The notes below the pieces were generated by a model. That model saw only the letters and a program-made list of their open reading frames with translations, ran no database searches and was not told where the DNA came from. A stretch of 64,000 nucleotides of DNA. Origin: Macrostomum lignano. Its lineage: Eukaryota. The translations under genes and the position numbers were made by a program. Position 1 is the first letter of the stretch; each line of letters starts with the position of its first letter. Below, in pieces: positions 12,951 to 62,700 of the stretch. The stretch is from NCBI GenBank assembly GCA_002269645.1, contig NIVC01001639.1:154201-218200 (forward strand). Reading direction: 5' to 3'.

Positions 12951-33053
<20,103 letters not shown>

Positions 33054-35599: not shown

Positions 35600-36130
35600 T
35601 TCTCACAGACACGGGCGCCAACCCTCACAGACACGGGCGCCAACCCTCAGAGACATGGGTGCCAACCCTCACAGACAGGGGCGCCAGCCCTCACAGACAG
35701 GCGCCAACCCTCACAGACAGGCGCCAACCCTCACAGACAGGGGCGCCAGCCCTCACAGACAGGGGCCAACCCTCACAGACAGGGGCGCCAGCCCTCACAG
35801 ACAGGCGCCAACCCTCACAGACAGGCGCCAACCCTCACAGACAGGGGCGCCAGCCCTCACAGACAGGGGCCAACCCTCACAGACAGGGGCGCCAGCCCTC
35901 ACAGACAGGCGCCAACCCTCACAGACAGGGGCGCCAGCCCTCACAGACAGGGGCCAACCCTCACAGACAGGGGCCAACCCTCACAGACAGGCGCCAACCC
36001 TCACAGACAGGGGCGCCAGCCCTCACAGACAGGGGCCAACCCTCACAGACAGGGGCGCCAGTCCTCACAGACAGGGGCCAACCCTCACAGACACGGGCGC
36101 CAACCCTCACAGACACGGGCGCCAACCCTG
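35600..36130. repeat. ~22-24-bp minisatellite (gccaaccctcacagacagggc)
   Basis: Direct inspection. Confidence 0.95.
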
Positions 36131-36788
36131 TAAAAAGCGGCGATCGAACCCCATCCTCCACATACAACTATTCTGCTGCATGTTTAAACTTTAAAAAAGT
36201 GTTTTTAACAAAGGGACTCTGAGCGGCACTTCTACACTGCGCTCGTGTAAAGGCTGCTGTGCGGTTTAGTTAAAACTACTTGTGCCAGGAAAGGCATGTA
36301 AATTCGGAGCCCCAGATACTCGGGGGGGGGGGGGCTCGACACTGCATACCGGATTAAAGCATGGATTTATCTATGCATAAATTACTGGCCCATGAGAGAT
36401 TGAGTTGCTTAGTCCCGTGTGTGCATGTGATGTTCATGCTCCGGTCAATACGGGACCCGCTCTGTTTTTGTCCCTTCATCAGGGGACAGAACAAACTTTT
36501 CTCTCACTCAGAGCCGCCCCACCGGAGGACGCGCGCAGCTGATCGAAAAAAGAAAGAAGAATCTTGTTGAACCCGGTTTGAGAGCTGCATGTCTGTAGAT
36601 AAGAGCCTTTTGACTCTTACGGGGATTTAGGATGTTGATTTCTTTCGAAGCGCGGTGTCCTTCATAATTATTGGTGTTCCGACGTCTTGACCGACGCTAA
36701 CAAAAATCGAAGTCGATATTTCTAATGATTAGAAGTTCAGTTCTGAATATAGTTTTCAATAGCAAAGATCGGTAACTGCGTTGGCTGT

Positions 36789-38716
36789 TCACTGCAGCAG
36801 CTCGTTGACCATCAGACGCAGGAAGGCGCGGTCCCTCTCGCAAAGCTGCCCAGCCTTGGCCGCACGCTGAAAGCGGGATGGGGGGCAACTGAGCTGCAGA
36901 GCAGACATGACAGCGGTGGGTGGAGCAGCCGCTAGATGAATCATTGTGATGGAAAACAGAGTTTGCTAAAACTGACTTTTTTCTCCTGGTCTCCAACCAG
37001 TAACAAGCAAGAACTTCCGTCTTCCACACCCGATGGTGTCCGCTGGCGTTGCTAGCGCGCTCATTAAATTAATAATTAGCTGCTTGCGGCGCGCTATTGT
37101 CTTCAATTCTCGCGCACGGACTACTCAAGCACGCGCCTCCCGTGTCTTGCAAGTTTAATTGAAGGCAGCAAGCTTTTGTTGCGAGCCGAGGGCTTCAGCC
37201 CTGCAACTGAGCTCTGAGCGTTTTCCCACCTTCTACTGGACATGCGGCCGAGAATTCGTGGACAATTAAAGCGGGAGGGTCTCACACTTGGGAATTGAGC
37301 AATTTCAATGAGAAAATACGTAGAATGGAAGCTTTCAGTTTCTACATGTAAATTTATGACTCTCTTTCCAGTAGGAACTAGGTTTTTAAAAATTTTATTG
37401 ATGCAACAGTTTTATGAAAATGCAGGCAGGGCTGCGGGCACCCCGGTAACATTTTCCTTCGGTGACATCGTCCTTCGGTGACATCGTCCTTCGGTGACAT
37501 TGTCCTTCGGTGACATCGTCCTTCGGTGACATCGTCCTTCGGTGACATCGTCTTTTGGTGACATCGTCTTTCAGTGACATCGTCCTTCGGGGACATCGTC
37601 CTTCGGTGACATAGTCCTTCGGTGACATCGTCTTTCGGTAACATTTTCCTTCGGTGACATCGTCCTTCGGTGACATCGTCCTTCGGTGACATCGTCCTTC
37701 GGTGACATCGTCCTTCGGTGACATCGTCCTTCGGTGACATCGTCTTTTGGTGACATCGTCTTTCAGTGACATCGTCTTTCAGTGACATCGTCCTTCGGGG
37801 ACATCGTCCTTCGGTGACATCGTCCTTCGGTGACATCGTCCTTCGGTGACATAGTCCTTCGGTAACATCGTCCTTCGGTGACATCGTCCTTCGGTGACAT
37901 AGTCCTTCGGTGACATCGTCTTTCGGTAACATTTTCCTTCGGTGACATCGTCCTTCGGTGACATCGTCCTTCGGTGACATCGTCCTTCGGTGACATCACA
38001 ATACTGTACGCAGGCACGCACTCGTACACGCGCTCACACAGGGTGTACATGAGCTGGGGGTTGGCTCTCTTAGCTGTGAACCGCACGAACCCCCGCCCGG
38101 CCAATTTTAGTTCACAAGCCTTAAATGAATCGAACGGAATCGAACCAGGGGTTCGTAGCGCGAGATTCAGCCGCGTTCACCGCTGAGCTGCTCTGCCCCC
38201 CCCCCCATCGTCCATCTAATTTAGTTGTCCATGGCAGGTCCCCAGTACCACAGTCAGTCACCGAGTCCATCAACTCACAACAGCTGCCATCACGGCCGCC
38301 GCAGAGTCCGGATCGATGCTGCACACCTCTTCGGCCGACGGGCGACGGCGCAGCCTGAAGAAGTGGAAGCCTTTCTTGAAGCGGACCGGCTCGTGGCGGC
38401 TGGCGGCGGCGGCAAAGTCGGAGTCGGCGGCCGGCGGAGCGGCAGCGGCGGCGCCTGCAAAGAGTCATGTTCACAAAGTCATGTTCACAAAGTCATGTTC
38501 TAAACTGTTCACACAGCCACTGTTCACACAGCTACTGTTCACAGTCCCTACTCACAGCCCCTTGGTGCTGGCACCCCTTCCCCAATAAAAGCTCCCCTGA
38601 CCCCAAGTCAATGTCGGCAAAGTGTGAATCAGTCGGAGCAGCTCACCAGAAGCGCAGCAGGCGAGTCCGGTAGCCAGCAGTCCGGCAGCCAGCAGCAGGA
38701 TCGACAGTCGGTGCAT
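36789..38716 (-). CDS. Neuropeptide prohormone, 116 aa, 3 exons, predicted peptide GFHFFRL
   Basis: Exons 38716-38647 (70 nt, g|gtgagc), 38454-38279 (176 nt, ttgcag| ... |gtgagt), 36893-36789 (105 nt, ctgcag| ... TGA); phases 1 and 0 close. Protein MHRLSILLLAAGLLATGLACCASG-AAAAAPPAADSDFAAAASRHEPVRF-KK-GFHFFRL-RRR-PSAEEVCSIDPDSAAAVMAAVLSCPPSRFQRAAKAGQLCERDRAFLRLMVNELLQ. Confidence 0.8.
37455..37997. repeat. 16-bp minisatellite (ggtgacatcgtccttc) in prohormone intron 2
   Basis: Direct inspection. Confidence 0.97.
38000..38200 (-). mobile_element. tRNA-derived SINE-like copy
   Basis: Minus strand: A-box-like cagctcagcggt, B-box ggttcgattcc, then a body with ccaaccccca and tgtacaccctgtgtgag shared with the 57826-58226 copy. 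Confidence 0.55.
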
Positions 38717-39589
38717 CTTCTAGCAGTTCTTCAAATTTGAAAGAGGAGCGCAAATGTAATTGTCAAATGGCACTGAGTTCAAATCGGTTCAGTTTCAATA
38801 TTTCTCGAATTTCTCCCCGTCTCATTCCCGCGGTGTTTTCCAGCCTTTTCAGCCTTCTCCCAGGCGCAAAAAACTTGCCTTTAAAACTGCTCTTCATTTT
38901 CTCAAGCGCAGCTGCCTCCATCGCTGCCCCGGGGACTGAGACCCACTTGAGAATACTTTGCCAGCTCTGCTGCAGAAGCAGCTGCATGCTAAATTTGGCC
39001 ACAATGCAGTCACCGCATGCGCCTGGTCTCCTTGTTCTTGAGGCCATCGCAGCGGGTGCTTTCCCACCTGCTGCAGTGAAGAAGCAGCCCTTGATTAGCC
39101 AAGAAAAGATTCTTGACACAGGGAACAATTTCCCTACTAAAAAACAAGTCAGGACTGCTGTAACACCCTGCGTGAGCGACTGCGTGTTCCATGGTGATTC
39201 GCGCTTCTGGCGCCTTGAGTCCAACTTGGAAAGTTGTAAATCTCGGTGCCTACTCGTATCTGCTGCCTTCTTTTCACCTCAGATAATAAGATTTCGAAGC
39301 CACTCAGATACCAAACCAATGATTTAATGTCACCGCCTCTCACCTTTGAGATTTCGGCCGAAACAGTTGCAGAGCAAGCCGAACTCTTTCAATGAGGAAC
39401 AGAGCTCGCAGTTTTTTAAAATAATTTTCGCGCAACTGGGATGCTTCGGTCGGCTCTGCGGCTTTAAAACATTTTTACCTATGGGCAGCCGGCCCGCATA
39501 GGCCTACTCACTGCAGCATGGCCCGTTCATTGGTTAGCCAGTCTGCAGGCAGTGCAGTGCAGCCAACCAGGGTTGAAGCTATTTGGCAT

Positions 39590-45670: not shown

Positions 45671-52624
<6,954 letters not shown>

Positions 52625-56758: not shown

Positions 56759-59700
56759 ATGTCGGCCGCTGCCATCGTCGACGGCGGCCTGTCGCGCGAA
56801 TTTATCAGCGACGATGGCGACTCCTCCGTGGGGATCCGGCGAGCGTCGTTGACCCGGCCGGGCGAGCCGCCCAGGTTCGTCAAGCACCCCAAGCCGGTGC
56901 TAAGCGTGGCCGAGGGCCGCTCGGTGCACCTGGAGTGTCGGCTGCTGCCGCTCAATGACAGCTCCTTGGCAACCGAGTGGTTCAAGGATGGCCGCCCACT
57001 GAATGCAGGTATGATCGGCCAGAGGGTAGGGCATGGACTGGACTGGAGGGTAGGGGCATGTACAGGACCAGAGGGTAGGGCATGGACTGAACCGGAGGGT
57101 AGGGCATGGACTGCACCGGAGGGTAGGGCATGGACTGGACCAGAGGGTTGAGCATGGACTGGACCAGAGGGTAGAGCATGAACTGCACCGGAGGGTAGGG
57201 CATGGACTGGACCAGAGGGTTGAGCATGGACTGGACCAGAGGGTAGAGCATGAACTGCACCGGAGGGTAGAGCATGGACTGGACCAGAGGGTAGAGCATG
57301 GACTGGACCGGAGGGTAGAGCATGGACTGGACCAGAGGGTAGAGCATGGACAGGACCGGAGGGTAGGGCATGGACTGCACCGGAGGGTAGAGCATGGACT
57401 GGACCAGAGGGTAGGGCATGGACTGCACCGGAGGGTAGAGCATGGACTGGACCAGAGGGTAGGGCATGGACTGCACCGGAGGGTAGAGCATGGACCGGAC
57501 TAGAGGGTGGAGCATGGTCTGGGTAGAGCCAGGTTTGAGAATTAGAACGCTTCTATTGTGGCAAGGTCTTCAGCAAGTCAATGTTGATTAAATGTGTTGT
57601 GTGCGACTGACTCCAAGCAACAATGGTCCATCTGCAGTAAAATCTCGCCGCCCTTCATAAGGCTCCCGTTTTAACACAACTTTCGAGCGAGGCTTCGTGC
57701 TGCTGCACATCACGCACACCTACCCGGACGACAGCGGCGAGTACTCATGCGTAGCAAAAAGCAACTTCGGCATGGACCAAAGCAACCCCGTTACACTGAC
57801 GTGAGTGCCCAGATCTGTCTGTCAATTTTTTTGTAAATCAGAGTCTGCAGCACAGCAGTTCGGAAGGAAACGCGTCAAGATCCCTGGTTCAAGGCACAGA
57901 GAGACTGTACATGCCTGACGATTCGAAAGTCAGAGTCGCTGTACACACTGTGTGAACGAGCAGGCACAAAAGCGCGGATATGTACACAGTCAAAAGCACA
58001 AGCACACACTCACACAGGGGTGTACAGCGGCCCTAACTTTATTTATCGTTAGGCATGTACACTTCACTGCGCCTTGGGGGGTTGGCCCTTAAGGCCGTTA
58101 ATTGCACGAGCAGGCCCAAGCCGAGATTCCAATTCAGCCCCAAAGTTAATGTGACTGCACTGGGAATTGAGCCTGGGCCGCCGGCACATCAAAGCGCCGT
58201 GCTAGACCACTGGGCTACGGCACCCCCCGTAGCCCAATAATCTCAAGATTATTTGAGATCGCAGCTTCCACCGTAACTTTGGCAAGTACTAACCAAAGCA
58301 AACTCTACTTAACTTGCAACGAATACACTGACCCATTTGACTAGTAACTATCCGGATATTTTGTACTCGATTATTGTAAACTCCCATTGTTTCCGCCAGA
58401 GTGGTGCCCGACGAAGGCGTGGTGACGCGAACGCAACTCCCCGAAGCGTCCATGGCGGCAAACATCGACCGACTAAACGAGCGGCTGAACAGCCGCAGCG
58501 TCCGCCAAGACTTTGACGACCAGGTGCCTCAGGCGGTGCCGCAGTTCGTCCGGCATTTGGAGAGCATCGTGGCCCAGGAAAACGGTCGCGTCCGGTTCGA
58601 GACTCGGGTGACGCCGGCCGCGGATCCCAACGTGCAGATCGAATGGTTCAAGAACGGCTTCCCGCTGACGCTGGGCTCCCGGCTCAAGGCTGTGTACGAC
58701 CGGGGCTACACGGCGCTGGAGATCAACTGCTGCTACCAGGAGGACAACGGATTTTATCACTGCGAGGCCGCCAACAAGCACGGCAAGGCGCAGAGCAACC
58801 AGGCTGAGCTCAGGTAGCTAAGCATGAGCACTGGTGCTCTCAATACTGCAGAAAATCAGCATACTGAGCTTCTCAAATCGCGAAAACAAAAATTTCAGGT
58901 GCTCAGCTTCGGCGGGCGTCGTCACGGCGTCCGCCCTACCGGAGTCATCTGTCATGAATATTCAGCGACTGGAGGAGTACACTCTGCAGGAGGAGTTCGA
59001 TCCGTAAGCGAGACCTCTCCACTGGATTAATATTTTATGCATCTTAGCAAGTGTGTTAAAATTCTCACAGGAAATTATTTTTGCATAGTTATGCCCTTTT
59101 ACTAACGCCGCAAGTCTCGTACCAGACCTGTATCAAGATGTAACGCCAAGGACCACTGTGGTGTAACAGGACGTAGAACTCAAAGATCGTGTAGTTTTTG
59201 GAGGCCAATTTCCTGGAAAAAAATACACTGCGGAGTTAGAAAAAAATAATTTTGTCATCAAATAGGGAGTAACGTGGGTCGTCTACCGATGAGGCCAGGT
59301 TCCCTGTAGCTTTACCACAACACCGCCACCAACAGCCTGGAGGCTGAATCGCGGAACCAGCTGCCGGAGCCGCCCCGCTTCCTCTCCGACCCGTCGCCGG
59401 CCCAGCTCCAGCTGATCGAAGGCTCGCCAGCCGCGTTCGAAGCTCGCCTCGACCCCGGCAACGGCAGTCGAGTCCAGGTGGCCTGGTTCAAGGACGGCCA
59501 GCCAGTCCAGTTCGGCTCGCGCGTGACGGCCAGTTTCGAAATGGGTGTCGCTCAGCTGCGGTTCGGGCACGCCAACGCCGAAGACTCCGGTGACTACTGC
59601 GCCGTGGCGCTGAGCGAAAACGGGCAGCACCAGTCTGGCTACTGCCGACTGGTCTGCTACGCGCAGGGCGGGGTGGTCACCACCTCCCAGCTGCCCGGAG

Positions 59701-62700
59701 ACGCCGAGCAGAGCATGCGCAGCCTCATGCTGCTCGAGGAGGAGCTCGAGCGCCGAACCGACGATTCTAGCTCCGCGTTTCTGGCAATGCAGCAGCAGCA
59801 GCAGCCGCCGCCAAGGATTGTGCGAGGTGTCAAGCCGCCGCCGCAGATCCGCGAGGGCGGCCAGGTGCTGCTGGATCTGCAGGTGCGTCTTTAGGGAGGC
59901 GTAGCGAATTTAATATCTGATATGATGCAATTGAGTTTTTACTGAGTAAGAAGAAAGCTGAAGCTGATTTTCGGCGAAAAGTCTACAGTCTTCGGAAGAA
60001 GCTAGTAACCCTAAACCTAACCCTAATCCTAACCCTAACCCTAGCCCTGCCCTAACCCTAGCCCTAACCCTAGCCCTGGCCTTAACCCTAGCCGTAACCC
60101 TAACCCTACCCTAACCCTAACCCTAATCATAAGGGAGGCCTTTCGTTAACTTGAAACTCATTTTTGAATACAAACGCTGTATCATTGTTTAAAGAATATT
60201 TTCACTGCAACTTAGGTTGAACCGTCAAGCGACGGTGACCTCAGCGTCGAGTGGTTCAAAGACGGCGCCTCGGTGGCTTGCGCCGCTCGAGTGCGCTTTG
60301 AACTAGAAAAAGGCCGCGCCCTGCTGCACATCAGTCACTGCAAGCCGGAGGACTCCGGCCTCTACTGGGCGGTGGTCAGCAACCGCGGCGGCGTAGCCGA
60401 GTCGAATCGCGTCGGCCTGGTCTGCCGGGCGGGAGAAGGGGTCGTCACTCGGACGCAGCTGCCTGGTGAGGCGCAGGGATACAAGCGTCTAGAGGAGCTG
60501 GAGAGACAGTGGCGAGAGTAAGTCTCAACAGTAATTAATAGTTTGTCCGCAAACAAACCACTCCCCGTTTTAATCACACTCCACCGTACCCCAGATGCAC
60601 CCACCTCACTCCTTTGCCAAGCCACAACCACCTCACTCCCCTGCCTAGCCACACCCACCTCACTCCCCTGCCTAGCCAAACCCACCTAACTCCCTTGCCT
60701 AGCCACACCCACCTCACTCCCTTGCCTAGCCAAACCCACCTCACTCCCTTGCCTAGCCACACCCACCTCACTCCCCTGCCTAGCCAATCCAACCTCACTC
60801 CCTTGCCTAGCCAAACCCACCTCACTCCCTTGCCTAGCCACACCCACCTCACTCCCCTGCCTAGCCAATCCAACCTCACTCCCTGCCTAGCCACACTCAC
60901 CTCACTCCTCTGCCTAGCCACATTCACCTAACACCGTGCCCCAACCAAACCCACCTCAATCTTAGCCTGTACGATAAGCAAACCTATTTGCACCACTTTA
61001 GACCTCGAGAAACCAACCCCCGTTTCAGGACCCCCATAGCACCTGACGAGTTTCGATTTCGAGAATCGGAGGAGCCTCAATCGGCGCCATATTTCGACAT
61101 TCTACCCGAGTCGTGCACTGTTGGCGAAGGCGATCCGGTGAAGGTGCTGGTAAAGCTCAGCGGCAATCCGCGGCCAGTAGTCACCTGGTGTCTGGATAAT
61201 CAACCGATTGCGACGGTCAGTACTTAAATTTCATTTGCCATGGAGGATGCGAGCATACACGAGCATATTTATACATGTAGGGGCTGTCATGATGAAAATT
61301 TGGGACGCTCCTGACATCCAATTGGCCGCTCGTTACACCACTCTTGACCCCAAGGTTTTAGGCATGATATTCAATTCTGACTTATCTGACGTCCTTGCAT
61401 CCAGTTTGACGCTTCTGACATTGGCATTTTTTTCCAGAGCGGTGATGAGACGCAGAACAACCTGGAGACAAGCAATGTAAGTCTTGCATTTCGTTATTAG
61501 ATTCGTGAGTCTTTTTACTCAATTAAAATCGATTAAATCATCTCGATTCCACCGGGCTACCAGACGGCCAACTACGTTGTGCACAAAGACGGTTCCATCA
61601 ACTGGCTGGAGATTGTTCGCTGCCAGGATGTCGGCCAGCACCAGCTCCGGGTGTTGGCGGCGAACCCATTAGGTCAGGTGTTCGCCGAGGCCGTCGTTAG
61701 CGTGGTGCCGGCTGGCGACTTTCGACCGGATCTCAAGCACATTGAGCCAGGCGAGAGCATGGATGTTTGCTGTTAGAGATTGCCTACTACTAAGTAGCTA
61801 GAGAAGAATTTGAGGCTAATAATTCACTACTGTGGGAAAGGAACTTGAGTCTCAGACGTTCTTAAGCTGGTGCTGGCTTGAGTCAAGTTGAGGTTGTACG
61901 GCTTCAGAAACCTCTTCAGGGACAGTGATTGGTCCTGATTAGATCTTCAAGATTTCTTTCAATCCGAGTCCTCTCTCTCTCTTCAATTCTTGTGTGTATA
62001 CCATAGTCTACCATACAGTCGTCTCCATCCAAGGCGAGTGACGGTCCAGGAAGCACCGCTGCTAAAAATGAAGGCCCTCCCTCTACCCCGGCGAGGAAAG
62101 ATGCGCCACGCGATGCTTCTTCTCTTACTGCAGCGTCAGTCAGCCGTACTTTGATTCTGTTGCTGCTGTTCTGAGCGAGAAATAGAGGACTAGATATATA
62201 ATTCCGAATGATTTCTTAGGCTTGAAACCATAAGAATTGCGTCATCAAATGGTGCTTACCATAAATTAACAGAGCTTATGATTCCCGCTCCTGTCTGCTA
62301 CTTTGAGTGAATTAGATGACCCAGTCTCTATTGGAGCAGACTGAGCCGGGTATGAGCATGGATGAAGGAATAACATAACATAAATCAAGCTGTAGCCGCT
62401 CATGCTCAAAGTGGATCATCCTCTCCCTCCCAGAAACCCTCTACTCTATACATTTAATATACATGTGACTATACATTTTCTCTTTAAGACAACCTATACT
62501 GAAAAGAAAGTTACAAATTTTATACGAAGCGAGATGAGTATTTACAGACTCGCTCAGTCAATCTACTTCAAGCGTTACGTCACAATTCCAAGATGGGGGG
62601 TTGCTCGGGTCCACGACTCCACGGACATTGCGCAGATGAGAAATCCATGATATTCCTTCATCCATGGGCCCAAAGATCATATATACACAAGATGGGCCAC

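What the first reader, a model, noticed from the sequence alone, without database searches (positions are those of the whole stretch)
36789..38716. Unannotated three-exon neuropeptide precursor yielding GFHFFRL plus a Cys-containing C-terminal peptide
The gene is invisible to the ORF track but assembles with canonical, phase-matched junctions. It encodes a signal peptide, an Ala-rich propeptide ending HEPVRF, a heptapeptide GFHFFRL (38371-38351) bracketed by KK and RRR with no amidating Gly, and a ~55-aa tail with three Cys. From memory, xYHFFRL peptides occur in planarian and schistosome prohormones, and a YHF motif also occurs in mollusc GnRH-like peptides. This would be a divergent (Y>F) member and a candidate signalling ligand; that link is unverified.
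Basis: partly seen in the sequence, partly recalled or inferred. Interest (0 to 1): 0.8.

Follow-up and report, generated by a model that had tools for sequence, protein, structure and literature searches.

The report
Flatworm YHFFRL-type neuropeptide precursor gene

Summary
The gene is real, on the minus strand.

Exon 3 most likely starts at 36866, not 36893. The product is then 107 aa, with a 46-aa tail carrying two Cys rather than three.

The window is Macrostomum lignano DNA. Two 97-99% identical sister copies carry RNA-seq-derived GenBank models, named only "hypothetical protein" (BOX15_Mlig034597g1 and g3).

The protein belongs to the flatworm "FRL-containing" prohormone family of Collins et al. 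2010:
- Smed-spp-18 and -19, whose GYHFFRL was confirmed by mass spectrometry
- Schistosoma npp-28 (AYHFFRL)
- Smed-grh-1, the GnRH-like precursor

Shared features are the signal peptide, a heptapeptide between dibasic sites with no amidating Gly, a C-x18-22-C-x2-D tail, and the same three-exon plan (intron phases 1 and 0).

M. lignano has at least five paralogous loci. Only one, Mlig008027, keeps a GnRH-like peptide.

An exhaustive profile search found family members only in flatworms.

Interest is moderate to low.

The parts
38647..38716 (-). Exon 1 coding part. ATG at 38716-38714. Encodes the signal peptide MHRLSILLLAAGLLATGLACCAS plus the first base of Gly24. Donor G|GTGAGC, phase 1.
   Evidence: hydrophobic core, sites compatible with the -3/-1 rule. 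The same 70-nt exon occurs in sister copy L001. AF2 models residues 2-27 as a helix.
38455..38646 (-). Intron 1 (192 nt, GT..AG, phase 1). Contains 14-15-nt tandem repeats. Its length differs between copies (749 nt in L001).
38279..38454 (-). Exon 2 (176 nt). Encodes the Ala-rich propeptide ending SRHEPVRF, then KK, GFHFFRL, RRR, and the first part of the tail (PSAEEVCSIDPDSAAAVMAAV). Donor GTGAGT, phase 0.
   Evidence: 98.9-99.4% identical to the sister copies, no indels. Top hit in the window for the non-Macrostomum family profile.
38378..38454 (-). N-terminal propeptide (residues 24-49). Its end, HEPVRF-KK, aligns with the first 'H-x-x-F-R-L' peptide of relatives (GHQIFRL, GHQMFRL), but no upstream dibasic site is present.
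   Evidence: Alignments. KHIGHQIFRL from SPP-19 was detected by MS in Collins 2010, supplementary file 4.
38351..38371 (-). Predicted mature heptapeptide GFHFFRL (free acid, calculated [M+H]+ 923.489). Flanked by KK (38377-38372) and RRR (38350-38342).
   Evidence: the only match to the motif in all six frames of the window. The homologous GYHFFRL is MS-confirmed in S. mediterranea.
36867..38278 (-). Intron 2 (1412 nt, phase 0).
   Evidence: The 27-nt stretch is 28 nt (C7 instead of C6) in both sister copies.
36789..36866 (-). Exon 3 coding part as corrected (78 nt including TGA at 36791-36789): RAAKAGQLCERDRAFLRLMVNELLQ*. Acceptor gctttcag|CGT. Cys91 is at 36842-36840 and Cys68, in exon 2, at 38323-38321.
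   Evidence: Sister-copy models. Paralogue Mlig013730 has the same 78-nt exon. Cys-Cys spacing of 22 matches the three M. lignano paralogues that keep both Cys. The profile score is higher than with the upstream acceptor (31.0 against 24.9 bits).

Best explanation
The locus is one copy of the Macrostomum lignano gene cluster Mlig034597. It is a three-exon prohormone gene of the flatworm 'FRL-containing' neuropeptide family.

Inferred mechanism:
1. The 107-aa preproprotein enters the secretory pathway through its N-terminal signal peptide, which is cleaved around residues 19-24.
2. A PC2-type convertase cuts at KK50-51 and within RRR59-61. Carboxypeptidase then trims the basic residues.
3. This releases the non-amidated heptapeptide GFHFFRL, an N-terminal propeptide ending in ...SRHEPVRF, and a roughly 46-aa C-terminal peptide with two Cys that is predicted to form a helix-turn-helix.
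4. By analogy with planarian spp-18 and -19, which are expressed in discrete neuron subsets, GFHFFRL would be a neuronal signalling peptide acting on an unidentified receptor, presumably a GPCR.

Evolution: the gene is a paralogue of the M. lignano GnRH-like precursor Mlig008027 and shares its exon plan and tail, but it encodes no GnRH-like peptide.

Shown here: the gene structure, the family membership, and transcript-based models for the sister copies. Inferred: processing, secretion, disulfide state, neuronal expression and receptor.
For: - Canonical, phase-matched splice sites and an intact ORF.
- Flanks of the sister copies match the window at 92.5-99.0% identity and the exons at 98.6-100%. 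The 324 coding nucleotides have no indels, whereas introns and the 3' flank do.
- GenBank models PAA66707.1 and PAA74592.1 come from an RNA-seq-guided StringTie/TACO/TransDecoder annotation (PMC5730564).
- Family alignment: the basic residue before the heptapeptide, H, F, R, L, both Cys and an Asp are invariant or nearly so.
- A profile built without Macrostomum sequences scores the 107-aa protein at E 2.7e-8 and finds no other locus in the window.
- The same three-exon plan, with intron phases 1 and 0 and intron 2 lying 5-8 codons before the second Cys, occurs in Mlig034597, Mlig013730, Mlig008027 and S. mansoni npp-28.
- GYHFFRL with KR/KK flanks is MS-confirmed. spp-18 is expressed in the cephalic ganglia, and spp-18 and -19 mark discrete neuron subsets (PMC4214590).
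- M. lignano has a PC2 homologue expressed in the nervous system (PMC4490696).
- AF2 gives pLDDT 85-88 for residues 70-100, with helices at 72-86 and 92-106.
Against: - There are no transcript, peptide or expression data for this exact copy. Its protein, which has F37 where the sister copies have L37, is absent from the protein collection.
- The signal peptide was judged by heuristics only, because SignalP was not available.
- Pro follows RRR, so the exact cleavage position within RRR is uncertain.
- In this copy both candidate acceptors are in frame, so minor use of the upstream one cannot be excluded.
- No receptor or bioactivity is known for any YHFFRL-type peptide in the papers searched.
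Confidence: 0.82

Rival explanations
1. The reader's 116-aa isoform, using the upstream acceptor at 36893 and giving three Cys in the tail, is the main product of this copy.
For: In the window copy the upstream AG (36895-36894) is in frame, follows a pyrimidine-rich tract and comes first in the intron. No transcript data exist for this copy.
Against: - The extra stretch is 28 nt in both sister copies. Using the upstream acceptor there replaces the conserved LCxxDRxFL end with an unrelated frameshifted tail.
- All database models use the downstream acceptor.
- The 9-aa insert breaks the Cys-Cys spacing of 22 found in the M. lignano paralogues that keep both Cys, and lowers the family profile score from 31.0 to 24.9 bits.
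- The intron position is conserved with Mlig008027, Mlig013730 and S. mansoni npp-28 only when the downstream site is used.
Confidence: 0.08
2. This copy is a silent or decaying duplicate. The functional gene is one of the near-identical sister copies produced by the recent genome duplication and aneuploidy of M. lignano.
For: At least three copies at 97-99% identity exist. The Mlig_3_7 assembly is known to be highly redundant (PMC5730564). The exact protein of this copy has no database entry.
Against: The ORF, all four splice sites, the cleavage sites and the 400-nt 5' flank (99.0% identical) are intact. The only coding differences lie in the non-conserved propeptide.
Confidence: 0.1
3. The functional unit is the conserved Cys-containing helical tail, a GnRH-associated-peptide-like domain. 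The heptapeptide would then be only a processing by-product or sorting element.
For: The tail motif C-x18-22-C-x2-D-[KR]-x-[FL] is conserved across macrostomids, polyclads, triclads, trematodes and a cestode. The tail is the best-predicted part of the AF2 model.
Against: The heptapeptide is the most conserved segment of the whole family: H, F and R are invariant and L nearly so. It is a stable MS-detected product in planarians. One M. lignano paralogue (Mlig016149/021558) has lost the second Cys but keeps GYHFFRL. The two readings are not mutually exclusive.
Confidence: 0.12

Closest known systems
Smed-spp-18 / Smed-spp-19 (Schmidtea mediterranea secreted peptide prohormones; Collins et al. 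2010, PMC2953531)
   Same: Signal peptide, one non-amidated heptapeptide G[YF]HFFRL between dibasic sites, and a C-terminal peptide with two Cys and the LCxxD[KR]xF[LI] motif. spp-19 also has an upstream H-x-x-F-R-L peptide that aligns with the window's HEPVRF.
   Different: The peptide has Phe instead of Tyr at position 2. The Cys-Cys spacing is 22 instead of 20. The propeptide is long, Ala-rich and lacks an upstream cleavage site. Core identity is 31-34%. In a weakly supported tree (bootstrap 62) the window gene groups with the M. lignano paralogues rather than as a 1:1 orthologue.
Schistosoma npp-28 (Smp_043650) and its trematode and cestode orthologues
   Same: The same three-exon plan with intron phases 1 and 0, AYHFFRL between dibasic sites, and a two-Cys tail ending CPEDREFLGL, compared with CERDRAFLRL in the window.
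   Different: The tail is shorter (Cys spacing 18-19). The S. mansoni gene spans about 19.5 kb, the window gene 1.9 kb.
Flatworm GnRH-like precursors: Smed-grh-1, M. lignano BOX15_Mlig008027, polyclad 'GnRH-2' (BCO16381.1)
   Same: The downstream half is homologous: the H-x-x-F-R-L peptide, the [GV][YF]H[FY]FRL heptapeptide and the two-Cys tail. Intron 2 is at the same position and intron 1 has the same phase as in Mlig008027.
   Different: These precursors carry a GnRH/corazonin-like peptide (QSYHFSNDWLPG, QQFHFSHG(VNG)WKPG, QNMHFSNGWQPG) directly after the signal peptide. The window gene has none, and no such motif occurs in any frame of the window.
M. lignano paralogues BOX15_Mlig013730, Mlig024884, Mlig016149/021558
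   Same: Same architecture without a GnRH-like peptide. Mlig013730 is the closest (48% identity in the core, identical 78-nt exon 3). Mlig024884 encodes the identical heptapeptide GFHFFRL.
   Different: The paralogues keep a better-conserved first peptide (GHQIFRL, HQMFRF, GYESFRL), whereas the window has the degenerate HEPVRF. Mlig016149 lacks the second Cys.

Membership tests
Flatworm FRL-containing prohormones (spp-18/-19, npp-28, grh-1) | N-terminal signal peptide | tested here: met
   Basic n-region, hydrophobic core at residues 4-19 and small residues at -3/-1 for sites 19-28. The test is heuristic because SignalP was not available. AF2 models residues 2-27 as a helix.
Flatworm FRL-containing prohormones (spp-18/-19, npp-28, grh-1) | Heptapeptide x-[YF]-H-[FY]-F-R-L between di- or tribasic sites, with no Gly for amidation | tested here: met
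   KK-GFHFFRL-RRR at 38377-38342. These are invariant or nearly invariant columns in A3-A5.
Flatworm FRL-containing prohormones (spp-18/-19, npp-28, grh-1) | C-terminal peptide with two Cys, C-x18-22-C-x2-D-[KR]-x-[FL] | tested here: met
Met with exon 3 starting at 36866: C68-x22-C91-ERDRAFL.
Flatworm FRL-containing prohormones (spp-18/-19, npp-28, grh-1) | Three coding exons: intron 1 in phase 1, intron 2 in phase 0 a few codons before the second Cys | tested here: met
   Exon mapping of L001, L003, L005 and L006. The window exons are 70, 176 and 78 nt.
Flatworm FRL-containing prohormones (spp-18/-19, npp-28, grh-1) | Significant sequence match to a profile of members from other genera | tested here: met
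   31.0 bits, E 2.7e-8 (Z = 2389) against a profile of Schmidtea, Schistosoma and Heterobilharzia sequences only.
Flatworm FRL-containing prohormones (spp-18/-19, npp-28, grh-1) | Processed heptapeptide detectable by mass spectrometry, and neuronal expression | not testable with these tools
   Shown only for S. mediterranea.
GnRH / corazonin / AKH-type precursors | pQ-x-[YF]-H-[FY]-S-x-x-W-x-P-G-basic peptide immediately after the signal peptide | tested here: not met
   Gly-Ala5-Pro2... follows the signal peptide. No [QE]x[FY]H[FY]S or WxPG[KR] motif occurs in any frame of the window.
GnRH / corazonin / AKH-type precursors | Associated-peptide region homologous to that of bona fide GnRH-like precursors | tested here: met
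   Met for the flatworm GnRH-like precursors only (grh-1, Mlig008027, polyclad GnRH-2). The exhaustive profile search gave no hit outside flatworms at E <= 1e-3, so homology to mollusc, annelid or vertebrate GnRH-associated peptides is not shown.

The most novel reading that the evidence does not exclude
The conserved core of flatworm GnRH-type precursors may be the FRL heptapeptide plus two-Cys tail rather than the GnRH-like peptide. Copies lacking the GnRH-like peptide occur in Macrostomum (4 of 5 loci), in triclads (2 of 3) and in every trematode and cestode member found. The weak clustering of the M. lignano paralogues hints that the loss happened independently in different lineages. On this reading, YHFFRL-type peptides took over as the ligands, possibly acting on GnRH/corazonin-type receptors. 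The shared (Y/F)HF motif of the two peptides would reflect an internal duplication.
Probability: 0.1. Interest if true: 0.6.

Novelty: new member of a known kind. Interest (0 to 1): 0.35.

Why it matters
It gives a function-level name, YHFFRL/FRL-type prohormone, to M. lignano genes that GenBank lists only as hypothetical proteins. M. lignano is a transgenic flatworm model. The work also fixes the gene model for this copy.

M. lignano carries at least five paralogous loci of the family, and only one retains a GnRH-like peptide. In a species where transgenesis and RNAi work, that makes two questions testable: what the orphan YHFFRL peptides and their conserved Cys tail do, and how they relate to GnRH/corazonin signalling. 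The family also occurs in schistosomes, liver flukes and tapeworms, where neuropeptide signalling is discussed as a drug target.

The family itself and its grouping with grh-1 have been known since 2010, so the advance is incremental.

Tried and rejected
- Pfam scan of the 107-aa protein: no family.
- ARAGORN on 36000-39500 and Rfam at gathering thresholds on the whole window: nothing. The tRNA-like A/B-box stretch in intron 2 therefore stays unclassified.
- Third word-index protein search, with polyclad GnRH-2 (P0024), aimed at mollusc or annelid GnRH precursors to test tail homology beyond flatworms. It produced only 3 candidates, both hits polyclad, so the test failed.
- Exact look-up of the window's 107-aa and 116-aa proteins: neither is in the collection, so no Logan or transcript contig could be fetched for this copy.
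- Literature searches for HFFRL, npp-28, Macrostomum with prohormone, and Macrostomum with GnRH: no paper in the held library describes the M. lignano genes or a receptor for YHFFRL peptides. Koziol et al. 2016 on parasitic-flatworm neuropeptides, recalled from memory, did not surface in these searches and could not be checked.
- Search for a remnant GnRH-like motif in all six frames of the window: none.
- Structure-library search with the AF2 model: not run. A 35-residue helical hairpin in a model with mean pLDDT 69.7 would give uninformative matches.
- Intramolecular C68-C91 disulfide: could not be assessed because no coordinates are returned. C68 precedes helix 72-86 and C91 follows it, so a dimer-forming disulfide is equally possible.

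Full report
**1. What is in the sequence**

- 38716-38647, donor G|GTGAGC
- 38454-38279, acceptor ttgcag|, donor GTGAGT
- 36893-36789, acceptor ctctgcag|

This gives a 351-nt ORF of 116 aa. KK-GFHFFRL-RRR lies at 38377-38342, with the heptapeptide exactly at 38371-38351, and no Gly precedes the basic residues.

The N-terminus MHRLSILLLAAGLLATGLACCAS has a basic n-region and a hydrophobic core (Kyte-Doolittle up to 2.97). Small residues occupy -3/-1 at several positions between residues 19 and 28. SignalP was not available, so this is a heuristic check.

**2. Source organism and existing annotation**

A word-index protein search returned Macrostomum lignano proteins that match over their whole length except for nine missing residues. 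They are PAA66707.1 (BOX15_Mlig034597g1) and PAA74592.1 (BOX15_Mlig034597g3), both 107 aa and both named 'hypothetical protein'.

Their loci are L001 and L002, from assembly GCA_002269645.1. Compared with the window, identities were as follows:

| Segment | Identity to window | Indels |
|---|---|---|
| Exons | 98.6-100% | none in 324 coding nt |
| Intron 1 | 86.5-90.3% | present |
| Intron 2 (non-repeat parts) | 96.5-98.2% | present |
| 5' flank (400 nt) | 99.0% | none |
| 3' flank (400 nt) | 92.5-93.0% | present |

The window is therefore a third copy of this gene in the redundant M. lignano genome. Its exact protein has Phe37 where the others have Leu37, and it is not in the 15-billion-protein collection.

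The GenBank models of this assembly derive from an RNA-seq-guided transcriptome built with STAR, StringTie, TACO and TransDecoder (PMC5730564). The sister models therefore carry transcript support.

**3. The exon 3 boundary**

This includes two mis-framed WormBase-type models. Four independent observations support the downstream site:

- The intervening stretch is 27 nt in the window but 28 nt (C7 instead of C6) in both sister copies. The upstream acceptor would shift the frame there and replace the conserved C-terminus.
- With the downstream site the two tail Cys are 22 residues apart, as in the three M. lignano paralogues that keep both Cys. With the upstream site the spacing is 31 and a third Cys appears.
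- Intron 2 then falls at the aligned position and phase (0) of the intron in Mlig008027, Mlig013730 and S. mansoni npp-28. Exon 3 is 78 nt, as in Mlig013730.
- A family profile built without Macrostomum sequences scores the 107-aa form at 31.0 bits and the 116-aa form at 24.9 bits.

In this copy both sites are in frame, so minor use of the upstream site cannot be excluded without reads.

**4. What family it belongs to**

Collins et al. 2010 (PMC2953531) list several related precursors:
- GYHFFRL from Smed-spp-18 and -19, confirmed by tandem MS, with KR/KK/RK flanks.
- AYHFFRL predicted from Schistosoma npp-28.
- A supplementary table groups spp-18, spp-19 and grh-1 as 'FRL-containing'. Smed-grh-1 carries a GnRH-like peptide (QSYHFSNDWLPG), then YHTGHQMFRL, then a GFHYFRL-type heptapeptide (the supplement's full precursor sequence prints GFFHYFRL; its peptide list and UniProt E3T7U7, give GFHYFRL), then a two-Cys tail.

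Aligning the window protein with these shows several invariant or nearly invariant positions:
- the basic residue before the heptapeptide
- H, F, R and L of the heptapeptide
- both Cys
- an Asp three residues after the second Cys, usually followed by [KR]-x-[FL]

The window's HEPVRF-KK aligns with the first 'H-x-x-F-R-L' peptide of the relatives. The non-Macrostomum profile ranks exon 2 first (E 1.6e-4) and the exon-3 ORF second among 2389 six-frame fragments, and finds nothing else in the window.

**5. Distribution**

A profile of 12 family members was run against 1.84 billion representative proteins. It gave 19 hits at E <= 1e-3, all from flatworms:
- Schistosoma species
- Fasciola, Fasciolopsis, Opisthorchis, Calicophoron and Paragonimus
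- the cestodes Spirometra and Sparganum
- Schmidtea
- the polyclad Stylochoplana pusilla 'GnRH-2' (QNMHFSNGWQPG ... VYHFFRL plus tail)
- M. lignano itself

Heterobilharzia came from the earlier word-index search.

M. lignano has at least five loci:

| Locus | Content |
|---|---|
| Mlig008027 | GnRH-like QQFHFSHG(VNG)WKPG + GHQIFRL + GYHFFRL |
| Mlig013730 | GHQIFRL + GYHFFRL |
| Mlig024884 | HQMFRF + GFHFFRL |
| Mlig016149/021558 | GYESFRL + GYHFFRL; second Cys lost |
| Mlig034597 (this gene) | HEPVRF + GFHFFRL |

A neighbour-joining tree of the 61-column core groups the five M. lignano loci with bootstrap 62, which is weak. Mlig013730 is the closest, at 48% core identity. This suggests an expansion within the Macrostomum lineage rather than 1:1 orthology with spp-18, spp-19 or npp-28.

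No GnRH-like motif occurs in any frame of the window.

**6. How it most likely works**

Shown: the gene structure, the conserved cleavage sites, the family membership and the transcript-derived sister models.

Inferred from the family and from general prohormone biology:
- The signal peptide is removed.
- A PC2-type convertase cuts at KK and within RRR. A PC2 homologue is expressed in the M. lignano nervous system and is essential (PMC4490696).
- Carboxypeptidase trimming gives free-acid GFHFFRL ([M+H]+ 923.489), an N-terminal propeptide ending ...SRHEPVRF, and a 46-aa tail.

AF2 on the family alignment gives mean pLDDT 69.7 overall but 85-88 for residues 70-100, with helices at 72-86 and 92-106. 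Whether C68 and C91 form an intramolecular or an intermolecular disulfide was not testable.

Planarian spp-18 and -19 mark discrete neuron subsets, so neuronal expression is the expectation here. No receptor is known for these peptides.

**7. Novelty and score**

The family and its link to grh-1 were published in 2010, and near-identical copies of this gene have unnamed GenBank models. In the held library no paper describes the M. lignano members.

This is a new member of a known kind, with a corrected exon boundary and a modest evolutionary note: a five-locus expansion in which only one locus keeps the GnRH-like peptide. Interest is 0.35.

Noticed in passing
window 37444-37997 (intron 2 of the gene): A 16-nt minisatellite (consensus CGGTGACATCGTCCTT on the + strand) with 34.6 copies at 91% match. 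The array is much shorter in sister copy L001 (about 218 bp), so copy number varies between gene copies. It creates spurious 125-200-aa ORFs.
   Followed up: partly
window ~38120-38200 (intron 2, minus strand): A stretch with tRNA-like A-box and B-box motifs (GCAGCTCAGCGGT ... GGTTCGATTCC) preceded by a G9 run, possibly a degenerate tRNA-derived SINE. ARAGORN and Rfam at gathering thresholds report nothing.
   Followed up: partly
window 38463-38543 (intron 1): Two short tandem repeats of 14 and 15 nt. Intron 1 is 192 nt here but 749 nt in sister copy L001.
   Followed up: partly
window 24309-33053 (+): Exons of a MEKK4/MAP3K4-like kinase gene: MEKK4_N matches at 24309-25793 and 28673-29140, and a full protein kinase domain at 31998-33053 (Pkinase, E 1.4e-52). 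This is the neighbour on the low-coordinate side of the prohormone gene. One WormBase-type model (P0046) wrongly fuses the prohormone with the antisense of this kinase exon.
   Followed up: partly
window 21401-24607 (-): A 3.2-kb array of a 24-nt repeat that reads as (WPDKLL[ND])n in a 1068-aa open frame. It is almost certainly a minisatellite, not a gene.
   Followed up: no
window 47231-50641 (-): Exons of a class-III aminotransferase, 4-aminobutyrate aminotransferase-like (Aminotran_3, E 3.5e-35 for 47231-47674). They are interrupted by long (GTCT/CAGA)n-type microsatellites that read as SVCL or DRQT repeats.
   Followed up: partly
window 56759-59894 (+): Several exons encoding immunoglobulin I-set domains (E 6e-16 at 58401-58817), from a titin-like, twitchin-like or cell-adhesion-type gene.
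   Followed up: no
L003 3106-3877 and proteins P0018, P0048 versus P0049: The M. lignano GnRH-like precursor Mlig008027 has copies that differ by a 3-aa indel inside the predicted GnRH-like peptide: QQFHFSHGVNGWKPG against QQFHFSHGWKPG. The indel sits exactly at the exon 1/2 junction. It could be a copy difference or an alternative donor.
   Followed up: no
proteins P0032, P0042, P0043 (Mlig016149/021558): This paralogue keeps GYHFFRL but has Asn in place of the second conserved Cys (HSGHLNGQDRELL). The Cys pair is therefore not indispensable to every family member.
   Followed up: no
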